A stretch of 64,000 nucleotides of DNA from Selaginella moellendorffii (GCF_000143415.4 NW_003314266.1:2068463-2132462); one strand, 5' to 3'; counted from the first letter of the stretch, positions 206 to 36,782 are shown. Numbers and translations are program-made. Notes: generated by a model from the letters alone, not told the origin.

Positions 206-302
206 TCCTCCGCTTGCTCCCGGAAAACCCTAGGGAACAGTGAAAAGGGTTCGAAGTTTTATTTATTCGGGCTCACAAAATCTGTGTAGACTTGAATCTG
301 GT

Positions 303-420
303 AGCTGCTGGTCAGGCCAGGATGGATAGAGCTCAATGCTTCCTTAGATCATTTCCTGCTAGCTGCTGGTCAGGCCAGGATGGATAGAGGTCGATGCTTC
401 CTTAGATCGTTTCTTACCTG
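303..420. repeat. Imperfect tandem duplication, ~58-bp period
   Basis: agctgctggtcaggccaggatggatagag..atgcttccttagatc starts at both 303 and 361. Confidence 0.85.
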
Positions 421-7900: not shown

Positions 7901-8058
7901 TCCAAGTCTTTTGAGAGAGGTCCTCGCCTAGAGCTCTACATAGCTTTCCAAGCTATCCAGCCGAGAGCAAAAGCTTCCCTCTCGGCTCTCAGCAAATTTC
8001 ACTTCTTTCTGTCAAAAGTATAGAAAGAATTTCAGCCATCGATCGAGAAGAAAGGGAG

Positions 8059-15560: not shown

Positions 15561-15854
15561 TAAAACAAAATCCCACTCCTCAAGAATAATTAAAGTTGCC
15601 TTTCTCCTCCATCAATATGAGTGCATAGAATATGGAAACAAAATACAAAAATGTGCATATCCATTAGCCTAAAAATCCCTAGCTTATATACAAGAGTGAG
15701 TGGTCTGGAATTTAATGGCTATCAAAATCCCATTATGTTAATATTAATATACGGCATTGTAGCCACACTTGGACCTTACAGTAATTAAGGTAATTATTAA
15801 TATGATTTAACTGGAATATAACAAAAAAGTATATATATATCATTGGATCAGTTT

Positions 15855-16700
15855 CTCATCAATAAACTCATAAACTCATCTTATTAAGTTGATTAGTTAT
15901 CACTAGATCAATCAACTCATAGATAACTCAACCAACTCATGCAGGACTTGGATGGGCAGCCCTGCTTGCCCTGCCCAGCCTGCCCAACTCAGGACTTGGA
16001 TGGGCAGGGCATCAGAGTGTATGCTGCTACAACTGACAGGGTGACCTTGTGGTTTTGAAGGTGCATGTGGCTGGACCACGTGTGGCAACGATTTCAGCTA
16101 GAATGTCCGAGCTCCCTTTTTTGGGACGTGGATCCCTTAGGCACACGTTGGAATTGTTTGTTAATCTTAAAATTTGTGAGCTGTGTGTGTAAGTGGTGTT
16201 TCAGTGAAAGAAATTGCAAATGTGGTGCAAGTTCATTGGTGTACTCTTTCTTTTGCTGTGCAAACTAAGAGTCACCACAAAAGTTCATCTCCCTCTTAAT
16301 ACGCTTTGTGATGTTATGAGAAATGTTGTTGCATTGGACAGAGGAGGCTCGAATTGGGGAGTTAGATCAGTGCAGAAAAGACTGTTGGATTTTAGCCTTT
16401 GTGTTCCCTGTGAAAATGTGAGGTTGGCATTGAATACTCTTGATCTTGAAACAGCTAAAAGGTGTCATATAAGCACTATCAATAGCCGACAATATGATGT
16501 TGAAGCAGCAATGGAGTTATGGTATATGGATTGTAATTTTTTTAATGTAATCATCTTATTAAGTTGATTAGTCATCAAAAGATCAATCAACTCATGAATT
16601 GATCAATCAATGAACAACTCAACCAACTCATAAAGTGATCAATCAACTCAGCATGAATTGATGTGAATTGATCAATCATCATAATTCAATTAGATCAAAT
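15855..16700 (+). mobile_element. Relic of an IS3/IS3EU-like DDE transposon: transposase fragment flanked by arrays of short (ATC)AACTCA repeats
   Basis: ORF 16214-16567 contains LNTLCDVMRNVV..GSNWGVRSVQKRL..VPCENVRLALNTLDLETAKRCH..RQYDVEAAMELWYMDCN, the pattern of the HTH leading into the first catalytic D (WH[IM]D). catcttattaagttgattagt occurs at ~15878 and ~16552, with many atcaactca units around both. Confidence 0.5.
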
Positions 16701-18661
16701 AAACACTTTATCCACTGTACACCACTCCCCCTTAATGGGAGGATTGAATATCTTGATTGGTTCCATCAGAAGATCTAAGAAAGTGCAAAACACTTTTGAG
16801 CTCATGAGCTCCAAAGTTAGAGCTGAGCTCAATTTGTACTTCAAACAACCTTATTAAACCTTAGGGCCTTACAAATGTGATGAGGCTTGGGTTTAAAGAG
16901 GGGCTTCTTGGGTCAAGGGCCAGAGATGTTGAAGCTTGTTGCCCTAACAGAAACAAAATGCATGCCTCATAAGAGCTTGCAGCCCCAGGCAAAAATCAGT
17001 TCAGAAGTGAACCAGTTTTTTTCCAATTGGTTTGCATGCGAATCAAATTTGGCCAAACCAGTTCAAGTGCAAACCACATTTTGCCGAACCAGTTTAGCTA
17101 AGTCCAAATCGAGGTTGCACTAATGGCCACCTCAAGCAGCAAGAGGGGGTAGAGTGGTTTACTTTGTAAATTGAATTATTTTGGTTAGCACGAAAGTTTC
17201 TTACTAGTTTTAAGGTGTTAAAATTAGTTTTAAGGTTGAACTAGATTTTATAGTTTTAAGGTTTTTTATAAAAAAAAGAAAAAGAAATCTAGTTCGCATA
17301 CAGGAAAATTTAGTTTGCATATCTACACACCAATGAGACTTTAAAAGCTAGAAAGTGTGTAGACTTTAATTTTAACAAACAGATAGCAAATTAATTGAGG
17401 ATCTATATTGTTTCAAGATTTATAGTTGATTATGTTGATTTCCATTGACTTGAGCTCAATTGACTTCAACTCATGAGCTTAATTCAATTTTTTGGACATC
17501 TCCCTATAACAAGACAAGTTAATAGGTATCATAAAATATATCTATCTTGAAGATTTTGATGATGTGTTTGCTGAAATAACATGAGTAACTCAGCAAATGT
17601 TGGTCGTTAGCAAAGTTTTTTGTGGATAAAAAATCGTATATGCTTGTCAATCTCCTCTACATTGCTTCCAGAGTCTTTGAACCAGAGTACACCTGTGCCT
17701 TGAAACCTGGCTACCAGGCCCTCAAAATCCTCCCCCTTGGACGCCGGATCATAGCTTAGCTCGCTTAGAAGGCCAAAATTAACATATTTTCATCAACCTC
17801 GCTCCGTCTCCGAGCAGGAGCTGGCTTTTATGCAAAGCGGACAGGAGCTCCTTGAATTGGCTGTTTGTGACGTGAGGCCACCGCCATGCGTCAGGATCTC
17901 GCTCCACCTCCGCTTCCATGTCCTCGGTCCGGTCTATTTCTGGGTCAGGACTCCGATATAGCCAAGGACGAAAGTGAGGCTGCTCCGGTAATCCTTTTCC
18001 CAGTCCTCTGCCTCAACTGGAACGTAGCCTTCTTTGTAGAGTTTGGTCACCTCGCGTTCCACAGACTCTAGACGATCGGCCTCCTTGATCCTGCTCCGGA
18101 GAGTGGCCAGCGAGGTGGCACAGCTCGGCCCAGAGGAAATAAGTGCTTCGAACAACTTTGTCTACAATGGTGCGAAGCTTGCCATCGCTGCTTCCTAAAG
18201 AACCAGTGAGACTTAGTAGAAGCCTCAGTACCTTTCCCAATATTCTTCGACTGCATCCAGAGCAAGCATGGTGCCATCGGTGCTCAGTGCTCCCGCGGGG
18301 AGAGGCTGGAGGAGTGAAAAAGTTGACAAGAATGGAGAGGGCTTCCTCCGTGACGCTTGCCAAGGATGCGCAGGCACGGAGCTCGGCAGCGTTGCCCTTG
18401 AGCAGCGACGACAAATACGCCTCGGGAAGCCAGTCGGGATCGTTGATTCTGATTTACCTGCAATGTGTGGAGGCCTCTGGAAAGAGCAATGTGTAGGTGG
18501 TTCTGAGACTTTGGATCTACTGCGAGTACTTCTTTAGAATGACCGGTGGTATGGTTGGGAATGAGCGGTCTTATGATGCCGGATTGCAGAATTTGAGGCA
18601 AATGGAAGTCTTTTATTTCTTAACCCATTTTATCATCATCGTTTGCGCTTCTTGACTTCTT

Positions 18662-19472
18662 TTAAGGGGGACAAAATGTGGCAATTATTTCAGAGGCTCC
18701 CAAGCACGAATAGCTCGAGGTGTTTGCTTCGCAAGGATAAGTTGACGACCTTGGGCACGCGGCCTTGAAAGCTCTCGCGTATTGGCTTGGGCTGCACTTG
18801 AGAGGACAAGTGTATCTCCCCCGGCAGCAGTACTGATCCTCGTTGAGTCCCAGGCATGGGCTCTTGCAAGCAATCACTCGTCCAATGTTGCTCTTGTCCA
18901 CCACCGCCAGCTCCTTGGGACACCCAGAGTTTGCATCGCTGCCGGATTTACAACCCGCCCAGGAGCACGACGAGTTCCTGGGAGCGATGGAGATGGCCAG
19001 ATTGTAGCCCTCGAGCAGAGAGACGGAGTACCGGGCCGGGAGATTGAGCTGGGCGATGGTGGCTGGCGGAGTTCCACGCTTGGAGCAGGATATATCGCCC
19101 GAGCCACAGTCGCCTGTGTCGCAGATGAATCTGCTGGTACTGGATCCGGGTGCCTGGCGCCAGGAGCACCCCGTTCTTCCCCAAAACCGGCCCGACCAGT
19201 CACGCGGGACGAAGAGCGAGAAGGTCTCGTCCGCGCTGAGCTCGGTTCCACTCGAAAATGGATTCGACACGCCCGGGTCAGTGGTCCATGCTGCCCACAC
19301 GGAGAAGGAGCACGAGTTTCTCAGTCGGATCAACACGCTGCTGTCTTGGGCTCTCGATCCATGCCCTGTGTCAGAGAAGGTTCGATTTTTGGATCTACGG
19401 AAGAAGAAGAAGAAGAGACTTGCCTGCTGCGAGTGCGAGGAGGAAGACAAGAGCAAAAACTCCACGACACAT
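18662..19472 (-). CDS. Thaumatin-like protein (PR-5 family), secreted; exon 1 19472-19424, GC-AG intron 19423-19366, exon 2 19365-18662
   Basis: NSCSFSVW, WSGRFWGRTGC, CDTGDCG, YSVSLLEGYNL, CKSPC..YCC, YARAFKAACP..YP. The spliced N-terminus MCRGVFALVFLLALAAG is a signal peptide. Confidence 0.92.
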
Positions 19473-20237
19473 CTCCAACGTTGTTGATGATGACTTTGGG
19501 AATTGCTCATGCGATTCTTATAGCAAGCGAGCCATTTGACTTGAGACAGTGATGCTGGCGGGCGCTGTTTCGAAAAGTCTTGGTCTCATTGCTGCTGATA
19601 AGATTGACAGCTGCTTCATTGAGTGTGACCGATCACCAGCTTTCGACCGACAACCAGTGAAGGATTAGAATGGTCAATCCTTCATTTCTACGCAGAACCT
19701 ATCTTCATAGGAGAATCATAGTACCAGTTTTGCGCTCGTACACGATCAAACTGAGGTCCTGGAGAACAATGAAAGATGAGAAAGAAGCTTCAGTGCACAA
19801 GATGGCTCTCGGTGGAAATTTTGTTTGAATAGATAAATTCTTATCAGAATTTGTTCTCGCTTCCTGGGTGCGTCTGGGTCATGTGCGCTGAGGCAAGTTC
19901 AAGAGCTGGATCGAACCACCATATTTAGCCCATCTCGGAGTCGGATGTAGAGTCCGAGGTCTGGGACTGGGCTTGGTGGCGTGGGCTAGTGGGATGTCGA
20001 TCTGTAATTCATTGCTGTCATGTCTCTGTCCATATGCTTGTCGTCAGCGCTCCAGACGGGATGTGAACGATCTAGTAGCACACTACTTCATCTGTGAGAG
20101 TCAAATAGTATATCTACGCTCGGGCAACTTTCTCAAAAATCAAATATCAAATATGAAGTTTATGAAATTTCTATGAAGTTTGGCCTAAACTTGAGACGTC
20201 TCATGTACTGGACAGAAAGTGGCAGTTGTCTCCATAT

Positions 20238-22496: not shown

Positions 22497-25400
22497 ATGC
22501 TGCCGGGGCGATTTGGCGGCGTTGTTCTAGCGCCGGTGTCGGAGCTCCTGGCCAGGGTTCTCGTCCAGATCGCAGAGACAGTCGTGGCGGCGAAGGATGT
22601 GCTCATCGAGAAGGAGAGCTTCAGCCAATTGGCCAGGTATTTGGAGAAGATCCGGCCGCTGCTGGTGGAGCTCCAGGACAAGATCGCGGACGATGTTCCT
22701 CCGCTCAGGAAATCGCTCGAGACCCTGAGCAAGGAGATGAGGAAGTCGCAGGAGCTCATCGCGCACTGCAGCTCCAAGAGCAAGATCTACTTGCTCATCA
22801 ATTGCCGCTCCATCGTCAGCCAGGTCCAGGGAATCACCCAAGAGATTGGGCGGTGCTTGAGCCTGGTGCCAATGGCGAGCATGAATCTCTCGGCCGACAC
22901 GAGGCAAAATGCCATGGGTCTTCTCCAGGACATGCAAAGCGCACAGTTCAAGGCAACTCTCGCGGGGGAGGAGATCGTGGGAATGATAGAGAATGGAGTG
23001 AGGACGCGTCGTCTTGACAGTAACTTCTCCAATGATCTGCTGCTACAAATCGCTCACGCGGTTGGGGTTCCAGTGAATCCAGTGGCTCTTCGCCAGGAGC
23101 TCTTGCAGTTTAAGAAGGAGAAGGAGGAGATAGAACTCCACAAGGACCAGGCCGAGGCTTATCAACTCGAGCAGATAATTGGGATCTTAAACGCGGCCGA
23201 TGCCGCGACCACGGCAGCCGAGAAGGAGTCGACGTACAGGAGGAAGAAGAGTTTCGGGGGGATTCACGCTCTACCTCCACTTCAAACTTTTTGCTGTCCG
23301 ATCACGCAGGAAGTCATGGAGGATCCCGTGGAGATAGCTTCTGGACAGATCTTCGAGAGGAGTGCCATATCGAAGTGGTTCTCGGCTGGAAAGAGGACGT
23401 GTCCGACAACCAAAGTGGAGCTGGACTCGCTGGAAGTGAAGCCGAACTTTGCTCTTCGCCAGTCCATCGAGGAGTGGAAGGAGAGGAACGTTATCATCGG
23501 TATCGGAGTTGCGCGGTCGAAAATTCTTTCGGATAACCAGGACGACATTCACAGTGGTCTTCGTGACTTGCAGAAGCTAAGCGAAGAGAAGTCCCTGCAT
23601 CGATACTGGATTGCCTCGGAGCGCCTCATTCCTGAAATTGTAAGGCTTCTCAAAGATGGCGGACGAGATACAAGGAGAAGGGCTCTAGAAACGCTGTGCA
23701 GTCTTGCAAAGAGTGACGAGATCAAGGTACTCTACTTTTTCTTTTCTCTCTCCCTCTCCATCACTTCTGAGGACTCTCGTGTTAGTGGATCAGGAAGAAA
23801 TCACGGCAGAAAGCGCCATCCCGATCATCGCTCGCTCTCTAGCTCGTGACGTCGGGGAGAGCAGGCAGGCTGTAGCACTGCTGCTAGAACTGTCGAAAAT
23901 TCCTACGAGCTTGGAGCAAATAGGAAAGGCTCAAGGCTGCATTCTGCTTCTGGTGGCCATGCTGAGAAGTGAAAATTCGAGCGCGGTGGAAGATGCTCGA
24001 CAGCTGCTGGCAAACTTGTCCGGCACTGACGCCAACGTTATCCAGATGGCCGAGGCGAACCATTTCGGGCCCTTGATCTCACGTCTAGATGAAGGTGAAA
24101 TGCTATGCGTTTTTTCTTGTTCTGACAGAAGTTTTGCAGGGAGTGACGCGACAAAAATTCTCATGGCAACTGCGTTGTCGGAGATGAGCTTGACGGACGA
24201 AAGTAAAGCTACGCTTGGCAAGACAGGAGCAATCCAGCCTCTGGCGAGCATGCTCTCTTCTGGTAAGCCTGAATTCCAACAGCCAGCTCTTGGAGCTCTT
24301 GCGAGCTTGTCAACGTATCCTAGCAACAGGGAGGCCATGATCGCGGCAAATGTGCTACCTCCGTTGCTCCAGCTATTGTTCTCCATTGCCTCGGTGGTGA
24401 TGGCTCTCAAAGTACAGGCCGCTGCTACGATAGCCAACATTTCTTCGTGGGACGGTAGTGTAGCTGGGGACCAAGGGGACGTGGTAGACAAGTTTAGGAT
24501 TCTCCAGAGTGAGGATACAGTGGCTCGACTTCTCGCGATGCTCAAGCTCACGGATCCTTCGGTGCAAGCTCACATACTATACGGACTGGTGGCAATGTGC
24601 TCGAGAAGCAGCGCCAAGACTCTCCGACTAAGTCTGAGACACGCAGGGGCCATGGCGCTGCTTATCAGCTTGTTTCTGGAAGCCGAGGATCAAGAGGTTA
24701 GAACAGGTTCCTTGAAGTTGGTGTTTTGGATCTCCAGGGATACCACAGGCAAGGATCTGGCCTCGCACGTAGACTCTCCATGCATGGAAGCTCTAGTGAA
24801 GTTCATCACCTCTTCGCAAGACGCTGGAGCCAGCAGCGCTGCCTTGGGAATCATTGGCATTCTCCCACAGGCGGATGCTCAAGTCATGCGGCTCCTCCAA
24901 CAAGCCAGGGTTTTGCCTGCCGCCATCGACGCTCTCTCCGAAGCTCTGTCCAGGATCTCGACCAAGGAACCATACAACACTCTCCTCGAGAACGTAGCGG
25001 GAGCGCTGTTACTCTTCACGAACCCCTCCAACGTCGAGGTGCAAACGCAAGCCGCCGGAGTTATACCATCGCTGGTGAGGCTGCTAGAGGTCGGGACGCC
25101 GCTAGCAAGGTCCCGGGCAGCCACAGCGCTGGGACAGTTCTCGGAGAACTCGGGCAAGCTGAGCTCCAGAGCTCCAGCTTCCAGAGGCTGCTGTAGCCTC
25201 TTCGGGCCTCGCCGCGACTTGGGCTGTCCAGTTCACGGTGGCAAGTGCTCGGTGCGATCGTCATTTTGCTTGGTGGAGGCGTGGGCGATCGCGCCGCTGG
25301 TCCAGACGCTGGGTAACGAGGACGGTCTCGTTCACGAGGCTGCGCTTGGGGCCTTGACAACTTTGCTCTACGATGATACGTGGGAGAATGGAGTTCACGT

Positions 25401-25650
25401 CATCGCGCAAGCGCAGGGCGTGAGGCCAGTGGTGCGGCTGTTGACGAGCGGGAGCGCGGGGGCCAAAGAGAAGGCGGTGTGGATGCTGGAGAAGTTCTTC
25501 CGGTTTAGAGAGTACCAGGAGGAGTATGGCAGGGCGGCCCAGATGCCACTGATTGATCTCACGCAGAGAGGTAGCGCGTCGACAAGGCAGCTTGCTGCGA
25601 AAATCTTGGCTCATCTGAATGTTCTTCACGACCAGTCGTCATACTTTTGA
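22497..25650 (+). CDS. U-box/ARM-repeat E3 ligase, PUB43/PUB44 (SAUL1)-like; introns 23727-23793 and 24095-24139
   Basis: UND region (SKIYLLINCRSIV), U-box (FCCPITQEVMEDPVEIASGQIFERSAISKWF..CPTT), NVIQMAEANHF, CPVHGGKCSVRSSFCLVEA, C-terminal LAAKILAHLNVLHDQSSYF. Confidence 0.92.
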
Positions 25651-27894
25651 AAAAATCATCCTAGATTTCAACCATGCGATGATGGAATATAGGCTTTTAA
25701 ATATATAAAGACAAGCTCCAGCTGGAGCTCCACCTTCTCAAGCCAAACAGGATCACTTACATGAACAATCCTGACTAAGAATCACTGCTGCTTAGCATTG
25801 TCACTAGCTTTGTTGGCGACCTTTGCAAGAACCTCTGCTGGGCTGTGGCCACAGGTTGGACAATTCACACAGATTAGTTGATCTTGAGCAATTCTTGCTG
25901 TGATGCACTCTTCAAACACTTCTAGTCACTATTGCACCACCAACCTCCGCTCTACGCACTCCAAGGCTGTTGGATGAAGCATCCTTCCAAAATCCTTTTC
26001 TTTTATTCTACTCCTTTCACTTTTACACATGCTGGAAAACACCCTCTCATCAACCTCCCTTCCAGCCAAATATTCCACTATAAAGAAGGATTACTCTTTA
26101 GCTGGCTCTGCAACAAATCGTCTTGTCTTGCAGCCATGGAGGATGGCTTCAACTACTTCGCTACCAGGATCACAGTCCTGGCCACCACCCACCACTTTGG
26201 CTCCTCATCCTTGGCCACGTCAGTGCCAGCAGATTTAGTCTTGTGCTGTCTCTGATCTGGGCCTGCAAGATGCACAATAATTCCAAGTGAGTAGCGGCAC
26301 ACCAGGCTATTGAAGTTGTTAATAAGCATGATGGCTGGAAACGGGCAAGCTTGAATGGCTATGATGGATGGGGGTATGCCCCATCATATGGACCACATTA
26401 TTCTTAAGATATAGAATCTATTTGGAGGATGCCGCTGTCAATGGTCTTGATTTACAAATAACACGCCATACCATGGACGGCTTGGAGACATGAACCAAGT
26501 ACTTAAGCTGGTCCAAACACGCTCGGAGACAGGCTTGCAGCATATAACATGTACAGAAACGTGTTATGACATGACAGATATCTTCTTCTACTACAAGGAA
26601 CCAAAGGGTCTATTAATGAATCTACTTAGCTAAACACATTTTGTATTAGTGATAATTATGAAAATTATAATTAAACATGTATTTATGCCTAATACAAATA
26701 TTATAAAATATATTTTAAAACTTTTTGAATTGGTTTTTGGTTTGCTTAAGCAAACCTGTAGGAGGACTGAGATGGTAATGAATATACTTAGAATATGCTT
26801 GAATATTCTTGGATATTCTATCATCCAATGGTGGTTATTCATTTAGATTAATTTCATATTTATAATTTATAAACGTGTTTATAATTTATAAACTTTTCTA
26901 ACCACTTTATATCATCATGAGCATACGTGGTTTTTGGAGCATGAGCCAAAGAAACTATATAATGTATAGTGCATTGGTTAAGCTCTATGTCCATAATGGC
27001 AATTACAAGGGAGCTCTCAAAGTTCCACTGCCAAGGCCCTCAATCCAGGATCTGCCATGAAGCAGAGAATCTAGAGCCAAGATGGACGAAGCAGCCATTG
27101 ATCCACATGAAGGGTAGAATGAAAAATAGGAGGAGCACTCATAGAGGCCTCCCAGCCTCAATTGTGACAAGCATGAAGCATTGAAACCAGCTCAGGGATT
27201 TGAGTAGTGCCCCCTCGAGATCAATCATGATGCTATCGTCATTCCCGGCCGCTGCATTGTCCACTGGCTCCAATGGATTGCTCTTGTCCCTAGGAAGCAT
27301 CAAGAAAATCATATTTGGACTAGTGAATTGATTGAGAATTGGCTCTCCCTGGAGGTTTGAGCTGAGAGCCACGATCCAGGATCAGAAACCCGCTATGGTG
27401 GTACTGATTGATTGCCCAGAATCAATCAATCAACCTGGAACGCATCTATGGATGGAGCTTAGATCTTCCTCAGTATGGCTCCCTATTATGTGAGTGGGCA
27501 GTGGGTAGAAAACAAAGATCAGTGGAGGACAATCTTTCTATTCCTATTCATTCCTCTTTTCTAAAGCGACTGATAGAGGGAGATTGTAGCAGCTGAGGAG
27601 TACAGTCAGGCTGCTTCTAGCTTCAGCTTGGTCGATGATGAGAAGTATCTGGCAAGGATGTTTACAAATGAGGAGAGTCAGTGCACGAAAAGGTTGAAAA
27701 GGTTCAGAAGCTGCCGAATTGGTTTATTGTCTACCGTAACCCTAAGTTTGGAAAAGTTGACGGATTTTAATTTTTAGCTCAAAGTTTTATTCTTTTATGT
27801 TTTTGATTCTTCAAAGTGAAGTCTAGTTTATTTTAGGATTTTTTTACTAGTATAAATTAACTAGAGGTAATTCTATTTAATCAATCACATAGAT

Positions 27895-29498
27895 ATGTCA
27901 GATTTGGATTGTGCTATGGATATTGTTCAGTCATCACCAGCTGAGGATTTGTCTACAGAATCAAATTCTTATGAAGGTTTGGTTTTTCTCTTTATTCCTT
28001 AGTATTTCTTGATTTATTTCTCTTTGGTTTTGTAGTTTCACAAGCAAAGAGGACAAAGTTGACCATCCTAAAAGCCACTATTGCATCACTTGTCTTTGAA
28101 AAAGCAAATTCAACCAAAATTCTTGAGCTGAAGGTTTTATCTACGTATGGTTTTGAAATCGTTTTTTTTCTGTAGTTTTGATTTGCTTTTTGCCTAGGTA
28201 TGGAACTTATAAAGTTCATCTTGCAAAGAACACTCTGCGAAGTGCAAAATACTTAACTTATATAATGGATTGTACAGATATGCATGGCTTGCAAACTTTA
28301 ACTATATATGGTGATTCATCCATGTGTGCATGATTATATAATAAATTTATGGTTGGTAAATGTTTCTCACTTACAAGGTTTGTAATTTTTTAAAAAAAAA
28401 TTAACAAAATTATAATTCTCTCACTGCAGATGGGTTGAACAACAGAAAAACCCAATTTACCACCATGGAACTTCAGAAAAAGTTCTTTATATTACAGATT
28501 CTTCTATCATTCAAATTATAGATGATTTTGATGTTAAATTAAGATTACAGCCAACTAGAGGAGCTTCTATATCATCTTTAATGGCTACTAGAGTTTATCC
28601 ACAAGCTATACATGTTGTTGTAATCAACACTGGTGTTTTTCCTAAAATAAAGATTGCTTCTTCTGATAATCCTTTGGACGTAACTATGGTAATGTTTTTT
28701 TCTATTTAATTTTCTATTTCTAAGATATTTTCACAGCTCTATATGCATCTGGAGCATGAAGAGCAATATCATCATATTGTAGCAGATTTATATGCTGGAT
28801 ATATGCCAAAGTTTTTATTTTTTAATATTATGAAAAGCATGAGTGCATCAGGTGATTTAGCAACACTTGGAAATACTTTATTTTTGCCACTAGTTGATTC
28901 AAACGAAATTCAGAGGCTCAATGAAGTTTATAAAACACACCGTGGTCTCACTTCTAAAGACAAGGTAATGTAAATTGTTTACATCTACTTTCAAATCTAA
29001 CTTCCAATTATACAGATTAGTGGATATTTCATCCCTGACAACCAATAGAGTCTCACTCAAGCTGAAAGTCTTTGCTCATTTTGCTCTTTCACAATGTTAG
29101 AGCAGAGAGAAGATGGTTTTGTTGTTTGCGCAAAGTGTAAAGGGCGTTCCATCCCTCGTAAATCAGCTACAATAACTGGTTCTATTATATCAAATGACAT
29201 GATGGAATATAGAGTTACAGTGCGTGATAAAATGGTGGATAAAATTTATAATTTGGATGAAGGGTCTATGGTCAAGTTTGCTATGGAGTCCCCAGAAAAG
29301 ATTGCTATTTATCTATCTTCAAAACCAACAGGATTCTTTCTATTGAATGAGGCAAATATTATTGTCCATTTTGAGACACCAAACAATTCAGCTATGGAAA
29401 TTGCCAACAACCAGATACAATTGTCTCTTGTCTATTTTTCAATTGCTTTCTCTATAATACAAATATCTATTCATGAAATCTTGCAATGCTTCTCTTAA
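27895..29498 (+). pseudogene. RPA70-like OB-fold ssDNA-binding gene carried by the Helitron (about 6 exons, two in-frame stops)
   Basis: Spliced translation gives MDCTDMHGLQTLTIYGD...LYNKFMVGKCFSL, ..NPIYHH..LYITDSSIIQ (DBD-A-like), and C4 zinc finger CSFC-x13-CAKC followed by ATITGSII..YRVTVRD (DBD-C-like). GT-AG introns. Stops are TGA 28331-28333 and TAG 29046-29048. Confidence 0.65.
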
Positions 29499-29803
29499 CA
29501 ATTTCTAGATTTCAAAGCACACAAACTAGAAATCCCATGGCAACGACTCACAAGATTGTTGCTGATTGCATTGCACATTCAATTAGAGAACTAATATGTG
29601 AGAATGATCGTGCTCTTACTGGATCCTACTGGATAACTTACAAAAGAAAAACAAAACAGCTTAGAAGAAAGTTAAATGGGAAGGCACACATACATCAAAG
29701 GTTTGTTTTGGTTCTTGGCCCTCGATATCCATCTCTGGCAATGTTGAGCTCTCCTTCACCCTATAGTAGCTCAAAAGAAATCATTTCAAGTAGAACCTAC
29801 ATC

Positions 29804-30402
29804 AAGACATCTCACTTGACATTTTGAATAACTTTCTTTGGACTTGGCTACCTTGTCCAGAGCTGTCACTATCAGTAGAGCCTGAAGATGCTCTACTGAC
29901 AGTGAAAAAAAGAAATCATTTCAAGTAGAACCTGCATCAAGGTATATAAAAAAAATGTCCTAACGAGAAAGAAAGTTACAAACTACTTCAAACCATCTTT
30001 ACGTCCATCGACTTTTCAGGGACTTGTCATTGGATGTGCGAGGGTTTTCCACACCCAACCCTGTAAACTGAAAACATCATGCTAGATACCAGTCTCCATA
30101 GTGAGAACAATGTTACTTGTTTGTGGAATCATCCTGCCTAGTCGAAGATATCTCACTTGACATTTTGAATAACTTTCTTTGGACTTGGCTACCTCGTCCA
30201 GGGCTATCACTGTCAGTAGAGCCTGAAGATGCTCTATTGACAGTGAGAAAAAAAAATCATTTCAAGTAGAACCTGCATCAAGGTATATAAAAAAATGTCT
30301 TAACAAGAAAGAAAGTTACAAACTACTTCAAACCATCTTTGAGTCCATTGACTTTTCAAGGACTTGTCATTGGACGTGTGAGGGTTTTCCACAGCCAACC
30401 CT
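29804..30402. repeat. Diverged ~258-bp direct repeat (29804-30062 and 30145-30402) inside the Helitron
   Basis: atctcacttgacattttgaataactttctttggacttggctacc...gagggttttccaca occurs twice; a partial third unit lies at ~29773-29805. Confidence 0.92.
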
Positions 30403-30903
30403 TGCACGTCCAATCAAAATCATTTCACATGGATTCTTGGGCAAGACCCAAGAATCCATGCGAGGTAGTGGCGTTAAACCCAAAAGAGATCTAGAAACAA
30501 TACAATTGAGCAGGCAGTCAATTACCTAAGTATGCATGAGTCTGGTACTTGTGCTCACATTTCTCTCATAAGCCCATTTTAGGCCCATTTAAATAAAGAC
30601 TTAATATAGCTTTAGGGCATAAATGGCTTTCAATGGAATAACATTGAGAAGTAAGTAAAAGGTCTTTGACTGGTCTAGATTATCAATTATCAGCCTTCAC
30701 AAAGCTGTTGATTGAAAGATAGAGAATTAATACTTGCTGAAAGTAGGCTAAAAATAGTCCATTCGGTTCGATTGTTGAATCTCTTTAAACAATCTTGATC
30801 AGCTAAACAATCATAGAAAAAATTAATCTGGATGCACCCACCTATCCAGTGGGTGTAAGGACATCAAGGGCAATAAGGGCATTTAAGTATAAAGGGCAAA
30901 ATT

Positions 30904-33900
30904 ATGACAAAGAGAAAATTTGAATGGACAGAACTTTTAGATGCAAAATTGTTATCAATTCAAGGATCTGCAAAAAAAAAAGCAAAAGAACTAAAATTCA
31001 ACCATAATATTGATTTAACTGAGCAACAAATTGTTTCTAGATACTATTATTTATCAAGAAAGAATAAAAATGAGCAAATAAAAACTATTAATATATCCAA
31101 AGAAAAACATGAAGAAAGTACTTTACAAAACCAATATACAACAGAAGAAGACAAAATACTTATGGAAACTTAGAACTCACAAAAACAAACAAATGAAAAA
31201 ATAAATATTTTTCGACAAAGAACAGGGAGTACTATATCAGATGAAAAACTTAAAAGAAGAGTATATTATATTAGAAGTAAAGAAAAAAAATCAATAAAAG
31301 AGAAAGAACAACAAGAAAATGAATATGACATAAACAATCCAAAAAGTATGAAAGCATTACAAATGTATAATGAAGCTATACATGATATACCGATACATCC
31401 ATGTAAAATATGTAAAAGACTTTGGTTTAAATATAATAAAAAACAAGAATATGCATGCAATCAATGTATGACAAATAAAGAAAAATATAAAAGTCCAGAA
31501 AAAATAAGAATGAATCAAATTGATCAATATACAGAACAACTAAATGATATTGAAGAGAAAATGATAGCTCTACGTATTTTATTTGCAAATATAACAATAC
31601 CAAATCAACCTCAATGTCAGCAGCGCATAAAAGGAGGAATAATAAATGTCCCAACTAATATTAAACCAATAATTAATAAACTACCAAGAACATTTGAAGA
31701 AACACAAACAATAACAATTCAGCTGAAACGAAGATTAACTGATAAATATTATTATAAATATGGAATAGCCAGACCACATTATATTTATAATAGTATAAAA
31801 CAATTACAAGAAACCGAACTATATAAGAAAAATAAAATTAATATAGATGAAAACTGGTTTCAACAAGCACAAAATTTAGATAATATAGATAATAACGCAC
31901 AAATAATATTAGAAAACGAATTACAACAAGAATTAAATGAAGATGATGAAAGTGTAAATCTTATAGACAACCCTGATAATGAGATATTACCAACAGATAC
32001 TATGGTAATTAGCTTCTTAGATGCAAATCAAATAGATAATTTTACAAATAAAGTTTTAGTTATAGCACCTAGTCAAGGACAACACCCATTAGGATTATTT
32101 GTAGATGAAAATGCTGAAGAAATGGCATATCCAAAACTATTTGGTGGAAAACCAAGACCATTAGATATAAAAAATAAATTTACATATCAAGAAATAATCC
32201 AATGGGAATTAATGAATGAGGATAGAAAATTTGCACGACATATTGAACATATATTTACAGCAGCAGTAAAAACTGAAATCAAATTTGTTAATCAAAATGC
32301 AGGTTTTAAATTAAGAAAATTTACTTATGAAGGAAGAAAAATCACATCAAAAGATGTGCTTGTAAATGGAAATATGGATAAAATATTAAAATCAAACATA
32401 GGTTTTAGAGATTTAAAAAATCTAAGAACATCACCAGATAATTTAGAAGCACTAAAAAAAGATGCATTTGCCATGATAAGACAATTAGGACCACCAACAC
32501 TATTTTTAATTTTTAGTTGTTCAGAAAGACATTGGGAACCATTAATAAATGCTTTAAAACATTTAAATACAGATATATTACAAAAAGAAGAGATAGAAAA
32601 TTTAAATGAAAAAGAGAAAATATATAAAATACTAAGAGCTGATCCAATCACCACAATACGATATTATGCACATAAAACATCAGCATTTAGAAAAATATTA
32701 ATGTCCAATTATCACATATTTGGAAGGAAAGTAAAAGACTATATATTTGTAACACAATTTCAACAACGTGGTACACCACATGAACATGCACTAATATGGT
32801 TAGAAAATCCACCACAAACATTAGAACAAATAAAAGAATATGCTAATGAAAATATATGTACTGATTTAGAGAAACTACCAGATAATATAAAAGATGTTCA
32901 AACTCATAAACATAGAAAAACAAGTAAAAAATATAAAAATATAAATTGTAGATTTAATTACCCAATTCCTCCAATGCCACAAACAGAAATCTTAGAGCCT
33001 ATAAAAGACATTACAAAACATGAAAAGGATTCATATACAATAATTTACAAAAAAATAAAAACAATACTAGAAGATAAAACTATAGATCTAAAAGATTTAG
33101 AGTTTGATGAATATTTAAAAATAATAGGAATAACATATGAGCAATATAAAGCTACAATAAGATCAACAATAACAAATACAAAAAAATTTTATAAACGAAA
33201 ACCAAAAGACATAAACACAAATACTTTTAATAACAAATTATCAAATCTGTGGCAATCAAATGTAGATATACAAATTATTCTTGATCCATATGCAGCAGCA
33301 TCATATTGTTTATCATACATTGCATGTATTGAAACAGAAATAACAAAGACATTATCAACTGTATTTAAAAAATGCCAAAAAGAAGGAACAAATGCATTTA
33401 ATAGAGTTCGGTTATTAGGAAATAGCTTCATACGTGGTAGGGAAATGCCAATTCCACAAGCACTTTTTTTAATATTGTCAATCCCATTTCATCATATGTC
33501 TAGAACTGTAAAGTTCATTGATACTAAACCACAAGAACAACGAACAAAGCGTTTAAAAATGAAACAAGACCTTGCAAAAATGCAAGAAGATGAAACAGAT
33601 ATAGCAGTATCTGGACTAATTGAAAAATACATGCAAAGACCAGAAGAATTAGAAGATTTAACATTAGCAGAGATAACAACTGAATATATAATTGAAAAAG
33701 AAGTAACAACACGAAAACATAAAAAAAAAAATATAATTAGATATATAAACTTTAGTAAAGAAAAAGATCCAGAAAAGTGGGCATTTGAAAGATTAATCTT
33801 ACATAAAAAATTTAGAAAAGAAGAAGATCTTAAAGAAATGTACACAACATACATGAATGCATATGAAGCAAATATGGAACAAATAAATGAAAAACAACAT

Positions 33901-36246
33901 CGATACATATATAAAAAAGTAACAAATGAGAATGAATTTGATTGGGAGAATCCAGAACAAGAATCAAATAAATTATTAAAAGAACAAGCACAGTATATAC
34001 AAGAAATAAACACAAACCAAACAGATGAATTTGATATAAAGAAAGATTTATTCAAAATGAAAATTAACAAAAAATTAAATTTAAATATAAAAGATAAAAT
34101 TTTAACAAATACAACAATTATAATACAAGATGAATACCTTATGGAAACTAGTAAATATCACCAATTATTAAGAACTCTTAATAAAAAGCAAAGAATAATA
34201 CATGATGACTTCATATTGAAAAAAATAAAACAACCTAACAAAAAATTATGCTTATTTTTAACAGGAGGAGCAGGAACTGGAAAATCAATGCTTTTAAATA
34301 CACTTATAAAAACACTCAAACGATATTATAAAACAAACCAAGATATAAATAATGAACCAGGACAAACAATATTAATAACAGCACCTACAGGAAAAGCAGC
34401 TTGTAATATAAATGGTTCAACAATACATTCAGCTTTTGCATTTCGACCAGAAGCATCAAAACAACGTCAAACAATATTAACAAATGACACATTAGATAAA
34501 TATAAAAGAAAGTTTTCAACAATAAAATGTTTAGTAATAGATGAAATATCAATGGTAAGTATAGAAATGCTACAAGATATAAATAGAAGATGTGAAAGCT
34601 TCAAAACAACATATGGAATAGACTTTGGTGGGATGGATTGTATATTTACAGGTGATTTCTATCAATTAAATCTTACATTTGAAGCACCAATTTATTCAAC
34701 AAAAACATATAGACCTGAAAATGATGTCTCCATACACCACCCATGGAAAAATAATTTTAAAATCTATGAACTTACTGAAATAATGAGGCAAAAAGATGAT
34801 ATAATCTTTATAAAAGCTTTAAATAAAATAAAAATAGGAGAACAAACAGATAAAGAGCTAGAATATATAAATAAACAAGTCACTACAGATACATATAACA
34901 CAGAATACTATTCTATATTTGCAACTAATGAACAAGTAAGAGAACATAATGAAAAAATAATACAACACATACAAGGTAAAGATATAATTATAGAAGCACA
35001 AGACAAACATGGAAATTCCTGTCCTACACATTTTTCGCTGCCAGATGACACAAGAAAAACACAAGGACTACATAAAATATTACATTTGAAAAAGAAAATG
35101 GCAATTGAAATAACACAAAATATAGCAACAGAAGATGGATTAGTAAATGGAGCAGATGGAGTATTACAAGATATAACCCAGATTGAAGAAGAACAAATAA
35201 TGTGGATAGAATTCCCAAATATAAAAACAGGTGAAAAAACAAGAGCTAAAGAAAACATAACAATAAAGCAAAATAATGAAAAAAACTGGACACCAATAAA
35301 AAAAATAACAAGAACAATAAATATTACTAAAAATAAAAACTATGTTATAAGTAAAACCCAATTTCCAGTACAACCATGCGCAGGAAGAACAATACATAGA
35401 GCACAAGGATCAACAGTTATGCAATTAGGATATGACCCATATAAAACAAAATATCTAGGACAAGCATATACTGCATTATCAAGAGCACAAACATTAAAAG
35501 GGATACATTTATATAGACCAATTGAACATAAACATATTAAAATCAATAAAGATGCAGCTAAAGAAATAATAAGAATGACAACAGAAGCACCATGGCAAAT
35601 TGATCTAATAGATTTACAAAAAGAAAAAACAGCTAAACAAACAATTATACAAGTTCTAAATACAAGATCTATTACTGCACATCAAGAAGATATAAAGAGT
35701 GATTCACAATTATTAACATCAGATATAATATGTATGCAAGAAGTAAGAACACAAAAACATGAGGATTTATATTTTAATAAATATAAATCATATATACATG
35801 AACAACCCCCACATATAGCAATATTGCATACAAATGACTACAAATCAGAAATAGTAGAACATTTAAAAACAGAAACAATGGCAATGTCATATGTATCACT
35901 AGAAAAAAATAAAAAACAATTACAGATAATAAATTTACATAGAAAACCTGGAACAAATATACATATATTCATAAAACAACTACAAAAATATATACAGAAA
36001 ATAGATAATAAAAAACCAGTAATAATTACAGGAGATTTTAATATTGACTACCAAATAGAAGAAGTAAAACCACTTCAAACAATAATGGAGAAAGAAGGAT
36101 ATATACAAATAATAAAACACAATACACGTAATAATAAATTAATAGATCATATATGGATAAAAGATATAATATATACAAAAGCAGGAATAGCACCTGCATA
36201 TTGGACAGATCATAACAAATTATATATCATAATAAAAAATATTTAA
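30904..36246 (+). CDS. Helitron RepHel transposase: two Myb-like repeats, HUH Rep, PIF1 helicase and C-terminal AP-like (EEP) endonuclease; one premature TAG at 31171-31173 (longest open part 31348-36246)
   Basis: Rep motifs GPPTLFLIFS, QFQQRGTPHEHALIW, DPYAAASYCLSY. Helicase motifs TGGAGTGKS, TAPTGKAA, IDEISMV, GDFYQL, EIMRQKDD, TIHRAQG, QAYTALSR. EEP motifs LNTRS, ICMQEV, IITGDFNID, IDHIW, WTDH. Intronless. Confidence 0.95.
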
Positions 36247-36782
36247 AAACAAAAGCAAACCAAGCGTTGCTGCAACGCAATGCGCAGCAATTTATTATAA
36301 TAGTGGCTAATTAACAGCTTCTTGCTGTAGCTAAATCATTCTTCACATGAGTCAATTTATTGTCCTGCCAACTCAAAAACCTAGAGCTGTTACTATATAG
36401 TCCTATATTTCCAACTCAAAGAACAGGATGAAGTGGTGTGGATGGCACTCGTCACTGGGTTTGCACAGCAGAAAGATTGCAAGATTGCAAGCTTAGCATT
36501 AGATGGCATGAAGGTTTACATGATGGGGTTTAAGAGAAACTCTAGTAAAATGTGTTAGATCCAGCTTTAGTGTACCTTTCTTCTTTATTTCCTCGGCTTG
36601 GACAAAATTTTAAAGTTGGTAGAGCCAATGTTATGATCCAATGCAAAAAGACAAAAATCTAGTCTCCCTAGACTATGTTATACCACCCAACCACCCTTGA
36701 CTTCTACTGTGGCACCTTTAAGAGTCTGGAAACTTCTGACACTTTTGCTCAATGCAGCATATCCAGGGAATTCAAATCATCA

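What the first reader, a model, noticed from the sequence alone, without database searches (positions are those of the whole stretch)
26737..36290. Plant Helentron/Helitron2 combining an AP-endonuclease-fused RepHel with its own RPA70-like gene
Seen: a 1632-aa open frame with HUH Rep, PIF1 helicase and a C-terminal EEP/AP-like endonuclease. Upstream, in the same orientation, is a spliced OB-fold/C4-zinc-finger gene. Established: canonical plant Helitrons (TC...CTRR ends) often carry RPA-like genes but lack the endonuclease. EN-fused Helentrons are best known from animals and other non-plant eukaryotes. The Rep motifs here (RGTPHEH instead of RGLPHAH, DPYAAASY..Y) look Helentron-like. Inference: this may be a little-described self-sufficient rolling-circle lineage in an early vascular plant, encoding nickase, helicase, endonuclease, SSB and a DNA-binding module.
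Basis: partly seen in the sequence, partly recalled or inferred. Interest (0 to 1): 0.85.

Follow-up and report, generated by a model that had tools for sequence, protein, structure and literature searches.

The report
Spikemoss Helentron transposon with RPA-like gene
This is a real, about 9.6-kb rolling-circle "jumping gene" of the Helentron type in the spikemoss Selaginella; its transposase is intact, its single-strand-DNA-binding helper gene is broken, and the design is already known from animals and has been reported in land plants since 2024.

Summary
Window 31348-36246(+) is an intact 1632-codon ORF with DUF6570, an HUH Rep, a PIF1 helicase and a C-terminal LINE-type AP endonuclease with all catalytic residues. 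Upstream on the same strand lies a spliced gene with GT-AG introns and matching phases. Its OB-fold/RPA identity rests only on indirect evidence. This copy carries an in-frame TGA and probably a frameshift.

The element (about 26735-36290) sits among ordinary plant genes. It is multi-copy in independent Selaginella moellendorffii DNA reads and shows almost no reads in two RNA runs. A deletion derivative on another scaffold joins the RPA-like part to the RepHel part.

It is a Helentron (endonuclease-bearing HLE2). Its nearest relatives are only 32-34% identical and form a deep sister clade to the animal Helentrons.

The novelty was overstated. Helentrons that carry both the endonuclease and an RPA gene were described in 2014. 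HLE2 elements, including the endonuclease-rich subgroup, were reported in land plants in 2024. I found no paper describing them in Selaginella.

Two features are unusual: GC3 of 12% in a genome of about 50% GC, and a very abundant 160-bp unit at the 5' end.

The scan's first-stage readers noted about ten Helentron-type stretches elsewhere in this genome. Two have the same layout. I did not check those notes.

The parts
26735..36290 (+). Whole Helentron-type element, about 9.56 kb. The 5' end is good to within a few T's. The 3' end is inferred from structure only and could lie up to about 36310.
   Evidence: Read depth jumps from about 22 (26500-26699) to 150-12000 from 26700 onward. Contigs of another run lose similarity exactly before 26735. 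An 11-bp subterminal inverted repeat and a 3' palindrome are present. A GC drop coincides with the element.
26737..26756 (+). 5' subterminal inverted repeat (26737-26747), nested in a perfect 18-nt palindrome (26739-26756).
   Evidence: The reverse complement of 26737-26747 equals 36253-36263. The palindrome folds at -6.4 kcal/mol with z = -3.0, and 0 of 200 shuffles fold as well. It is unique in the window.
26735..26896 (+). A 5' terminal unit shared with a very abundant short repeat. It is probably a non-autonomous HINE-like partner, and it also occurs in tandem.
   Evidence: Summed k-mer depth is about 12000, against about 22 in the flank and 150-1350 in the rest of the element. Go-back joints run 26891->26735 with 16 letters in between, in two runs. 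The unit has its own hairpin at 26859-26892 (z = -3.1).
27895..28149 (+). Possible first exons of the RPA-like gene (ATG at 27895). The junction to the next exon is unresolved, and a 1-nt frameshift in a T-run is possible.
   Evidence: Reading of the three frames. Inference only.
28176..28377 (+). RPA-like gene exon (N-terminal OB-fold part) with an in-frame TGA at 28331-28333.
   Evidence: When joined to the next exon it aligns to the DUF223/REPA_OB_2-like ORF of relative L003 with score 74, against shuffles of 29 +/- 4.9 and a maximum of 50.
28430..28688 (+). RPA-like gene exon (rest of the OB fold).
   Evidence: AG acceptor at 28428-9, GT donor at 28689-90, and the phase fits. 93% identical to L002 from 28607 onward.
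28737..28964 (+). RPA-like gene exon (linker).
   Evidence: AG at 28735-6, GT at 28965-6, phase 0 on both sides. Conserved in L002.
29049..29408 (+). RPA-like gene last exon: a CxxC-x14-CxxC zinc-ribbon motif plus a beta-rich domain (candidate DBD-C). The true C-terminus is unknown, and the frame stays open to 29495.
   Evidence: Atlas features score 0.86 to Rep_fac-A_C clusters, followed by CTC1, POT1 and SSB OB clusters. 84% identical to SELMODRAFT_428853. Homologous to L003:11783-12073.
29804..30402 (+). Two tandem copies of a 341-bp unit with a palindromic core. Read depth here is lower than in the rest of the element, so this is probably a nested insertion or duplication present in only some copies.
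   Evidence: 93% identity. Depth 50-185.
30904..31170 (+). An 89-codon ORF in the same frame as RepHel, cut off from it by a single TAG (31171-31173). It forms a three-helix domain of unknown family.
   Evidence: AF2 pLDDT 82.7 with helices 8-18, 23-34 and 40-88. No Pfam hit and no significant fold match.
31348..36246 (+). Intact RepHel-EN transposase ORF of 1632 aa.
31525..31860 (+). DUF6570 domain, published as a marker of HLE2. It is preceded by a Cys-rich motif at 31402-31467.
   Evidence: E 2.5e-8, above cut-off. PMC11417382.
32413..33321 (+). Rep (HUH) nuclease. The H-x-H motif is at 32776-32793 and the two-tyrosine motif (Y-x3-Y) is at 33304-33321.
34177..34800 (+). PIF1-like SF1 helicase core. 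Walker A is at 34264-34287 and Walker B at 34534-34551.
35620..36243 (+). AP/LINE-type endonuclease (EEP fold) with complete catalytic residues.
   Evidence: E 1.6e-16 to LINE endonuclease structures. Motifs are N at 35656-70, E at 35734-45, GDFN at 36031-42, and D-H at 36139-56 and 36202-16.
36253..36290 (+). 3' subterminal inverted repeat (36253-36263) followed by overlapping 6-7-bp GC-rich hairpins (36264-36290). The RepHel stop codon lies only 7 nt upstream.
   Evidence: The hairpin energy is not better than shuffles (z about 0).

Best explanation
This is a nearly complete copy of a multi-copy, endonuclease-encoding Helitron-like element (Helentron, HLE2) resident in the nuclear genome of Selaginella moellendorffii.

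Inferred mechanism, from what is established for Helitron-like elements:
- The HUH Rep domain nicks one strand at the left end, using its tyrosines.
- The fused PIF1-type helicase unwinds 5'->3' and peels off a single strand up to the right-end signal (subterminal repeat plus palindrome).
- The single-stranded intermediate is inserted at a T-rich site.
- The accessory RPA-like OB-fold/zinc-ribbon protein would coat the single strand.
- The C-terminal LINE-type endonuclease probably nicks target or donor DNA. Its role is not known for any Helentron.

Shown here: the domains and their catalytic residues, the spliced accessory gene, the terminal repeats, the 5' boundary, the multi-copy state and the physical linkage of both genes.

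Inferred: all activities, the exact 3' end and the T/T target.

This copy has an intact transposase. Its RPA-like gene is broken (an in-frame TGA and probably a frameshift). It has a stop between an upstream three-helix ORF and RepHel, and a deletion of about 695 bp. In the two RNA runs examined only three reads, each fitting only in part, were laid on it.
For: Domains:
- Pfam DUF6570, Helitron_like_N and PIF1 are above cut-off, and EEP is weak.
- The EN profile hits LINE endonuclease structures at E 1.6e-16 with invariant catalytic residues.
- HUH, Y-x3-Y and Walker A/B align with Helentron proteins.

Relatives:
- All 120 listed homologues share RepHel architecture with DUF6570. Many carry EEP and OTU domains. 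They are marine invertebrate Helentrons plus unnamed contigs.
- In the tree the window protein joins P0001-P0003 (SH-aLRT 100) as sister to 43 animal-type sequences.

Termini and residence:
- An 11-bp subterminal inverted repeat, a 5' palindrome and a 3' hairpin are present.
- The 5' boundary at 26735 and 10- to 60-fold excess depth appear across 26900-32499 in an independent DNA run.
- A deletion derivative on scaffold GL377673.1 joins 29779 to 33511.
- The flanks carry plant genes: a U-box/ARM gene, Psb27, a PPR-DYW gene, an LRR kinase gene and a thaumatin gene.

Accessory gene:
- Splice sites and phases fit.
- It aligns to an ORF of relative L003 (z about 9). That ORF scores DUF223 at E 0.0025 and 0.93-0.96 to DUF223/REPA_OB_2 clusters.
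- The last exon scores 0.86 to Rep_fac-A_C clusters.
Against: - No canonical Helitron (HLE1) reference was available, so the HLE1-versus-HLE2 placement rests on nearest neighbours and the DUF6570 marker, not on a rooted tree.
- The window branch is very long (1.75) and compositionally deviant.
- The 3' hairpin is no more stable than shuffled sequence.
- An 11-bp inverted match could arise by chance if its position were free.
- No empty site was seen, so the 3' end and the T/T target are unproven.
- No direct Pfam, PDB or HMMER match ties the upstream gene to RPA.
- The single-sequence AF2 model of its last exon was unusable (pLDDT 52).
- The very abundant 5' unit has a different 3' end from this element, so the relation between the two is unclear.
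Confidence: 0.9

Rival explanations
1. The family is a recent horizontal arrival in Selaginella from an AT-rich donor, or belongs to an AT-rich Helentron lineage that moves between hosts. This adds to the main reading rather than replacing it.
For: - The ORF has 26% GC and GC3 of 11.6%, among flanks of about 50% GC.
- Copies are 91-100% alike, and their differences are balanced between transitions toward and away from AT. The AT-richness therefore predates the amplification.
- The nearest relatives also lie on AT-rich contigs (30-38% GC). In L003 the element is 33-38% GC against a 47-55% flank.
- The best protein match anywhere is only 34% identical.
Against: - No donor or close relative is known.
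- The accessory gene has short GT-AG introns and a higher GC (30-38%), which is compatible with long residence in plants.
- The relative L003 lies beside a plant-type zf-RVT/RVT_3 gene. The clade may therefore simply be an old, vertically inherited plant lineage with its own composition.
Confidence: 0.3
2. The upstream spliced gene is not RPA-like. It is an unrelated captured host gene or a family-specific orphan.
For: - There are no Pfam hits for any exon, even at E <= 1.
- There are no PDB hits for single exons or for a 3-sequence profile.
- HMMER against 1.84 billion proteins found only a Selaginella paralogue.
- The AF2 model had low confidence and its fold matches were meaningless.
Against: - It aligns significantly to L003's ORF, which scores DUF223/REPA_OB_2.
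- The Atlas leads for the last exon are all OB-fold ssDNA binders: Rep_fac-A_C, CTC1, POT1 and SSB.
- A CxxC...CxxC motif sits where RPA70 DBD-C has its zinc ribbon.
- RPA genes are the usual Helentron companion (PMC4067079).
Confidence: 0.2
3. The AT-rich block is foreign DNA or an assembly artefact (contamination or a chimeric join), not part of the plant genome.
For: There is a sharp composition break. No annotated protein matches it.
Against: - An independent DNA study of the same species holds the block (share 0.55) and shows it to be multi-copy.
- A fragment sits on another scaffold of GCA_000143415.2, next to plant genes.
- Plant genes flank it on both sides in the window.
Confidence: 0.02
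4. It is a canonical Helitron (HLE1) that happens to have a C-terminal extension.
For: Plant Helitrons often carry RPA-like genes. Many canonical Helitrons exist in this genome, according to unverified scan notes.
Against: - The DUF6570 marker of HLE2 is present (PMC11417382).
- The EN domain is verified.
- All nearest homologues have Helentron architecture.
- The Rep motif reads G-T-P-H-x-H, not G-L-P-H-x-H.
- There are no TC...CTRR ends, and there are terminal inverted repeats instead.
Confidence: 0.02

Closest known systems
Animal Helentrons with an RPA ORF, for example the mite Metaseiulus occidentalis Helentrons and DINE-1/HINE partners (Thomas et al. 2014, PMC4067079)
   Same: - One ORF carries Rep, a PIF1-type helicase and a C-terminal AP endonuclease.
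- A separate RPA70-like ORF is present.
- There are subterminal inverted repeats, and the 5' repeat is nested in a palindrome.
- There is a 3' palindrome and T flanks.
- Abundant short non-autonomous partners share the termini.
   Different: - The transposase is only 27-31% identical and forms a separate deep clade with three unnamed sequences.
- The RPA-like gene is spliced and too diverged for Pfam or CDD.
- There is no OTU protease.
- The Rep motif has T where animal Helentrons have S (G-T-P-H-E-H).
- The host is a lycophyte.
- GC3 is 12%.
HLE2 elements of land plants found by HELIANO, for example HelenSM92 of Sphagnum magellanicum, with land-plant members of subgroup b (Li et al. 2024, PMC11417382)
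   Same: - It is an HLE2 in a land plant with short terminal inverted repeats and T/T-type flanks.
- DUF6570 is present.
- The EN domain is typical of subgroup b, which that paper says includes land-plant hosts.
- The RPA gene lies upstream of RepHel, as that paper reports for HLE2.
   Different: - That paper reports RPA only in subgroup a and EN almost only in subgroup b. Here both occur in one element.
- HelenSM92 carries a GIY-YIG domain.
- Selaginella is not mentioned in the paper's main text, and its supplements were not available to me.
- I could not place this element in their subgroups.
Canonical plant Helitrons (HLE1) with RPA-like genes
   Same: It is a rolling-circle RepHel transposon with an accessory OB-fold single-strand-binding gene of the DUF223/REPA_OB type.
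   Different: - HLE1 has TC...CTRR ends, A/T targets, no DUF6570 and no endonuclease.
- In HLE1 the RPA gene is usually downstream of RepHel.
Proto-Helentron of Phytophthora (PMC4067079; revisited in PMC11417382)
   Same: It has Helentron-type coding capacity in a non-animal host.
   Different: - Proto-Helentron has Helitron-like ends (5' TT, 3' hairpin-CTAG).
- This copy ends with an inverted repeat plus a palindrome and has no CTAG.
- The abundant short unit sharing the 5' end does end in ...CTAGTATAY. I did not follow that up.

Membership tests
Helentron (endonuclease-bearing HLE2) | Rep domain with an HUH motif and a two-tyrosine motif | tested here: met
   P-H-E-H-A-L at aa 477-482 and Y-C-L-S-Y at aa 653-657 align with homologues. 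Helitron_like_N scores E 1.8e-19.
Helentron (endonuclease-bearing HLE2) | PIF1-like SF1 helicase fused to Rep | tested here: met
   PIF1 scores E 3.1e-24, above cut-off. Walker A and B are conserved.
Helentron (endonuclease-bearing HLE2) | C-terminal AP (LINE-type) endonuclease domain in the same ORF | tested here: met
   The profile of 12 C-terminal domains hits LINE endonuclease structures at E 1.6e-16 over nearly the full length. N14, E41, D139, N141, D176, D197 and H198 are invariant. The single-sequence Pfam hits alone were below cut-off.
Helentron (endonuclease-bearing HLE2) | DUF6570 domain (published HLE2 marker) | tested here: met
   E 2.5e-8, 34.9 bits against a cut-off of 24.3. Its marker status comes from PMC11417382.
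Helentron (endonuclease-bearing HLE2) | Diagnostic residue: S (not L) between G and P before H-x-H | tested here: inconclusive
   The window has R-G-T-P-H-E-H, so T is neither S nor L. The three closest relatives have S or Y. The rule is from PMC4067079.
Helentron (endonuclease-bearing HLE2) | Subterminal inverted repeats, with the 5' one nested in a palindrome | tested here: met
   26737-26747 is the reverse complement of 36253-36263 (11 bp). The 18-nt palindrome at 26739-26756 has z = -3.0. The 5' position coincides with the read-defined boundary.
Helentron (endonuclease-bearing HLE2) | Palindrome or hairpin at the 3' terminus | tested here: inconclusive
   Hairpins with 6-7-bp stems are present at 36264-36290, but their energy equals that of shuffles. 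The 3' boundary was not verified by reads.
Helentron (endonuclease-bearing HLE2) | Insertion between T and T without a target-site duplication | tested here: inconclusive
   T lies on both sides (26734 and 36291), but the ends lie in T-runs and no empty site was available.
Helentron (endonuclease-bearing HLE2) | Transposase groups phylogenetically with HLE2, not HLE1 | tested here: inconclusive
   All 120 listed homologues carry RepHel domains and nearly all DUF6570, and the tree places the protein beside animal Helentrons. No HLE1 references could be included.
RPA70-like accessory protein | OB-fold DNA-binding domain recognisable as RPA DBD (REPA_OB_2 / DUF223 / cd04474-5) | tested here: inconclusive
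   There are no direct Pfam or PDB hits. Indirectly, it aligns with z about 9 to L003:10833-11306. That ORF scores DUF223 at E 0.0025 (below cut-off) and 0.93-0.96 to DUF223/REPA_OB_2 clusters.
RPA70-like accessory protein | C-terminal OB fold with a C4 zinc ribbon (Rep_fac-A_C) | tested here: inconclusive
   A CxxC-x14-CxxC motif is present at the start of the last exon. Atlas similarity to Rep_fac-A_C clusters is 0.86, which is a lead only. There is no Pfam or PDB hit. The AF2 model has pLDDT 52.
RPA70-like accessory protein | Intact reading frame in this copy | tested here: not met
   There is an in-frame TGA at 28331-28333, and no stop-free single-intron link exists.

The most novel reading that the evidence does not exclude
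The element may represent a deep, previously uncharacterised Helentron clade. That clade would be extremely AT-rich (GC3 about 12%), would carry both the AP endonuclease and an old co-inherited RPA-like gene, and would live in much GC-richer, probably plant, genomes. Its only relative with genomic context (L003) has the same two genes in a different order and lies next to a plant-type retroelement gene. Either this is an ancient plant-specific branch that bridges the published 'RPA' and 'EN' subgroups of HLE2, or it reached Selaginella by horizontal transfer.
Probability: 0.3. Interest if true: 0.5.

Novelty: new member of a known kind. Interest (0 to 1): 0.35.

Why it matters
Until 2024, Helentrons were thought to be absent from land plants. 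This is a well-preserved lycophyte copy with an intact 1632-aa transposase, defined ends, an accessory single-strand-binding gene and an abundant short partner family. It offers a concrete plant model for a question still open for all Helentrons: what the fused endonuclease and the RPA-like protein do during rolling-circle transposition.

The extreme codon bias relative to the host is a useful handle for asking whether the lineage is old in plants or was acquired horizontally.

It does not reveal a new kind of system.

Tried and rejected
- **Phage tblastn.** It gave only distant helicase hits and was irrelevant.
- **Exact-product look-ups.** I tried the RepHel, the PPR and the thaumatin proteins, hoping to fetch the allelic haplotype and an empty site. 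None is on record.
- **Searches for annotated Selaginella paralogues.** The first search, on the mid-part of RepHel, found no paralogue. The second, on P0121, returned only SELMODRAFT_428853 itself. Full-length sister copies could not be fetched.
- **Direct tests of the upstream exons.** I ran Pfam at E <= 1, phmmer against the PDB, a 3-sequence profile against the PDB, and phmmer against 1.84 billion proteins. None showed an RPA link.
- **AF2 of the last exon without an alignment.** It gave pLDDT 52. The Foldseek and VIA matches to beta-sandwich and cupin folds are meaningless and were discarded.
- **AF2 of the 89-aa upstream ORF.** The model was confident, but no fold match reached E < 1. 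A Myb, SANT or homeodomain reading was not adopted.
- **Comparison of that ORF with the N-terminal extensions of relatives.** There was no significant similarity.
- **Two 12-mer matches of the 5' end in L002.** They turned out to be one chance match copied by a 12-kb host duplication.
- **Second copy in the window.** None was found.


Full report
**Observation**

The window holds an intact ORF at 31348-36246(+) of 1632 codons. The ORF has 26% GC and a strong A excess on the coding strand. The surrounding DNA is about 45-55% GC. With this composition about 9% of random codons would be stops (my estimate), so the frame is maintained and not accidental.

Pfam finds the following domains:
- DUF6570 at aa 60-171
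- Helitron_like_N at aa 356-483
- PIF1 at aa 944-1151
- two C-terminal EEP hits below the curated cut-offs

I tested the endonuclease separately. I aligned the last 208 residues with the equivalent parts of eleven homologues (alignment A1). I then searched that profile against all solved structures. The best matches are LINE-type endonucleases (2v0s, 2v0r, 1vyb and others), at E 1.6e-16 to 1e-12 over nearly their whole length. Exonuclease III and APE1 follow. The residues N, E, D-x-N, D and D-H are invariant in the alignment and present in the window protein. The HUH motif, the Y-x3-Y motif and Walker A/B are also conserved.

**The upstream gene**

Between about 27.9 and 29.4 kb, on the same strand, there are short open stretches separated by short AT-rich gaps with GT..AG borders.
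- Exon 28176-28377 ends in phase 2, and 28430-28688 supplies the third base.
- Exons 28430-28688, 28737-28964 and 29049 onward join in phase 0.
- The last exon begins with CxxC-x14-CxxC.
- The exon 28176-28377 contains an in-frame TGA (28331-28333). No single intron gives a stop-free link.
- The junction to the putative first exons (ATG at 27895) works only with an implausibly short 26-nt intron or with a 1-nt change in a T-run.

This copy's gene is therefore broken.

Direct similarity searches found nothing RPA-like:
- Pfam at E <= 1
- phmmer against the PDB
- phmmer against 1.84 billion representative proteins, which found only one protein, P0121

P0121 is SELMODRAFT_428853 of S. moellendorffii. 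It is an annotated fragment of the same exon at another locus.

The indirect evidence is better.
- The language-model search placed the last exon nearest to Rep_fac-A_C, CTC1, POT1 and SSB-type OB clusters. The score of 0.86 is a lead only.
- The closest RepHel relative with genomic context (L003, a 17.5-kb metagenome contig) carries a split gene downstream of its RepHel-EN.
  - One ORF of that gene scores DUF223 at E 0.0025 and 0.93-0.96 to DUF223/REPA_OB_2 clusters.
  - My joined exons 28176-28688 align to that ORF with score 74, against 29 +/- 4.9 for 500 shuffles with a maximum of 50.
  - Its last ORF aligns with my last exon, including a shared G-x-F-x-x-N-E-x-N-I-x-x-H-x-E block.

I rate 'RPA70-like OB-fold/zinc-ribbon protein' at about 0.8. 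Single-sequence AF2 of the last exon failed (pLDDT 52), and its fold matches were disregarded.

**Extent, copy number and residence in the plant genome**

The flanks encode ordinary plant genes:
- a U-box/ARM ligase at 22.5-25.6 kb
- Psb27 at 38.8 kb
- a PPR-DYW editing factor, an LRR receptor kinase, COG4 and thaumatin

Earlier scan notes name the genome as Selaginella moellendorffii. I confirmed this through P0121 and its scaffold GL377673.1 of GCA_000143415.2.

Independent DNA runs of the same species label hold the AT-rich ORF, with a share of 0.55.

I laid one DNA run on 26500-32499. The results were:
- Summed depth is about 22 in the flank (26500-26699), 150-1350 across 26900-32499, and about 12000 in 26700-26899.
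- 1844 contig pieces are 95-100% identical.
- The depths are sums over contigs and not exact copy numbers. Even so, the family is clearly multi-copy, and both the accessory-gene part and the RepHel part are repeated.
- Contigs of a second run (organism B, coded) lose similarity exactly before 26735.
- Go-back joints 26891->26735 appear in two runs.

The 5' end at 26735 is therefore supported by data independent of the assembly.

A deletion derivative on GL377673.1 (L002) joins window positions 28607-29779 directly to 33511-34394, at 91-93% identity. The same junction appears as a loose end in organism B. The two genes therefore belong to one mobile unit.

L002 and organism B also show about 695 bp between window positions 29577 and 29602 that this copy lacks.

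Among 13 listed variants in the first 1.15 kb of the ORF, 4 are synonymous and 9 are not. Two of the nine are nonsense changes in other copies. The neutral expectation for the synonymous share is 0.32. Copies therefore decay neutrally after insertion, as transposon copies do.

Two RNA-seq runs, of which about 12% was read, gave three partial reads. The copy is essentially silent in those samples.

**Ends**

The sequence at 26737-26747 is the exact reverse complement of 36253-36263.
- The 5' repeat is nested in a perfect 18-nt palindrome at 26739-26756 (z = -3.0).
- The 3' repeat lies 7 nt after the stop codon. It is followed by overlapping GC-rich hairpins up to 36290 and then by T's.

This is the published Helentron end structure: subTIRs, a 5' inverted repeat nested in the subTIR, a 3' palindrome and T flanks (PMC4067079).

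There are caveats. The 3' hairpin is no more stable than shuffles. No empty site was available.

**What it is**

All 120 listed homologues in 5.8 billion proteins share the RepHel architecture with DUF6570. Many have EEP and OTU-type domains. The named ones are from sea cucumbers, bivalves, corals and hemichordates, which are classical Helentron hosts.

Identity is low: 34%, 32% and 32% to three unnamed sequences (P0001-P0003), and 27-31% to the rest. In a quick ML tree the window protein joins P0001-P0003 (SH-aLRT 100) as sister to the 43 animal-type sequences. Its terminal branch is very long, and its composition deviates from that of the other rows.

According to the HELIANO study, DUF6570 marks HLE2, and the EN domain marks its subgroup b, the classical Helentrons. 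I could not include HLE1 references. The formal HLE1/HLE2 test is therefore incomplete, although nothing points to HLE1.

**Comparison with the literature**

Thomas et al. 2014 (PMC4067079) describe Helentrons that encode Rep/helicase/endonuclease in one ORF plus a separate RPA70 ORF. They also describe abundant non-autonomous HINE/DINE-1 partners that share the termini.

Li et al. 2024 (PMC11417382) overturned the view that land plants lack HLE2.
- They found HLE2 in 13 species of 6 land-plant classes.
- They list land plants among the hosts of subgroup b.
- They note that RPA lies upstream of RepHel in HLE2.
- They also state that RPA in HLE2 is limited to subgroup a and EN to subgroup b. 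An element with both is somewhat off their pattern, but not off the 2014 description.

No paper in the searchable library mentions Selaginella together with Helentron, Helitron2 or HLE2. The HELIANO supplements were not available.

First-stage notes of this scan list about ten Helentron-type stretches on other pieces of this genome. Two are described as complete copies with the same RPA + RepHel-EN layout, and one as a HINE-type family with an empty site. These notes are unchecked. They agree with the read-depth evidence, and I used them only as leads.

**Unusual points**

1. GC3 of the transposase is 11.6%, with 59% A at third positions, in a genome whose neighbouring genes are GC-rich. Differences between copies are balanced transitions, so the bias predates the amplification in this genome. 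The three nearest relatives also sit on AT-rich contigs. In L003 the element is about 36% GC against a flank of about 50% that encodes a plant-type zf-RVT/RVT_3 protein. The AT-richness is therefore either a trait of this Helentron clade or a trace of horizontal transfer. I put transfer at about 0.3.
2. The first 160 bp (26735-26896) belong to a repeat about 500 times deeper than single-copy DNA. That repeat occurs in tandem and ends differently (...CTAGTATAY) from this element. It is probably a HINE-like partner or satellite, but I did not resolve the relation.
3. An 89-codon ORF (30904-31170) lies in frame with RepHel and is cut from it by a single TAG. It folds confidently into three helices (pLDDT 82.7). 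It has no Pfam match, no significant structural match and no detectable similarity to the N-terminal extensions of relatives.

**Verdict**

This is a genuine, well-preserved but not fully intact Helentron of Selaginella moellendorffii. It is a new member of a known kind. It is of moderate interest as a plant representative of a deep Helentron branch, and it is not a new system.

Noticed in passing
window 26735-26896: The first ~160 bp of the element has summed read depth of about 12000, against about 22 for single-copy flank. It occurs head-to-tail (joints 26891->26735 with 16 letters between) in two runs. In other copies it ends ...CTAGTATAY followed by T, unlike this element's 3' end. It is probably a HINE-like non-autonomous family or a satellite built on the Helentron 5' end.
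   Followed up: partly
window 31348-36246: Codon bias is extreme. GC at codon positions 1, 2 and 3 is 38%, 28% and 11.6%, and third positions are 59% A. Ile plus Lys make up 24% of residues. The host region is about 50% GC. An earlier scan note reports another intact, extremely AT-rich gene 9.5 kb beyond the window's end.
   Followed up: partly
window 29577-29602 versus L002:10635-11331: Other copies (scaffold GL377673.1 and contigs of 'organism B') have about 695 bp here that the window copy lacks. The content of the extra piece was not identified.
   Followed up: partly
window 29804-30402: There are two tandem copies (93% identical) of a 341-bp unit containing a 40-nt near-palindrome. Read depth here is lower than in the rest of the element, so it may be a nested small element present in only some copies.
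   Followed up: no
L002:700-5092 and 12382-17071 (S. moellendorffii GL377673.1): This is a direct duplication of host sequence with a period of about 12 kb and 79-97% identity. The Helentron fragment (9670-12379) ends 2 bp before the second copy begins. The transposon may have been involved in the duplication.
   Followed up: no
L003 (JGI metagenome 3300072920, 17.5 kb): This is the closest relative with genomic context. Its RepHel-EN (2174 aa) has the RPA-like split gene downstream (10533-12076), not upstream, plus an unknown 471-aa ORF upstream (380-1795) with no Pfam match. The element is about 36% GC, beside a flank of about 50% GC that encodes a plant-type zf-RVT/RVT_3/RNase H protein.
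   Followed up: partly
window 10001-18000: There is a second AT-rich block (34-40% GC) without long ORFs, between a GC-rich region and a thaumatin gene (18662-19510, minus strand). It shares no similarity with the Helentron.
   Followed up: no
window 22497-25650: The U-box (22497-23849) and Armadillo-repeat (23704-25650) ORFs overlap in different frames. This is either one PUB-type E3 ligase gene with an intron or frameshift, or a broken gene. It lies about 1.1 kb upstream of the Helentron's 5' end (26735).
   Followed up: no
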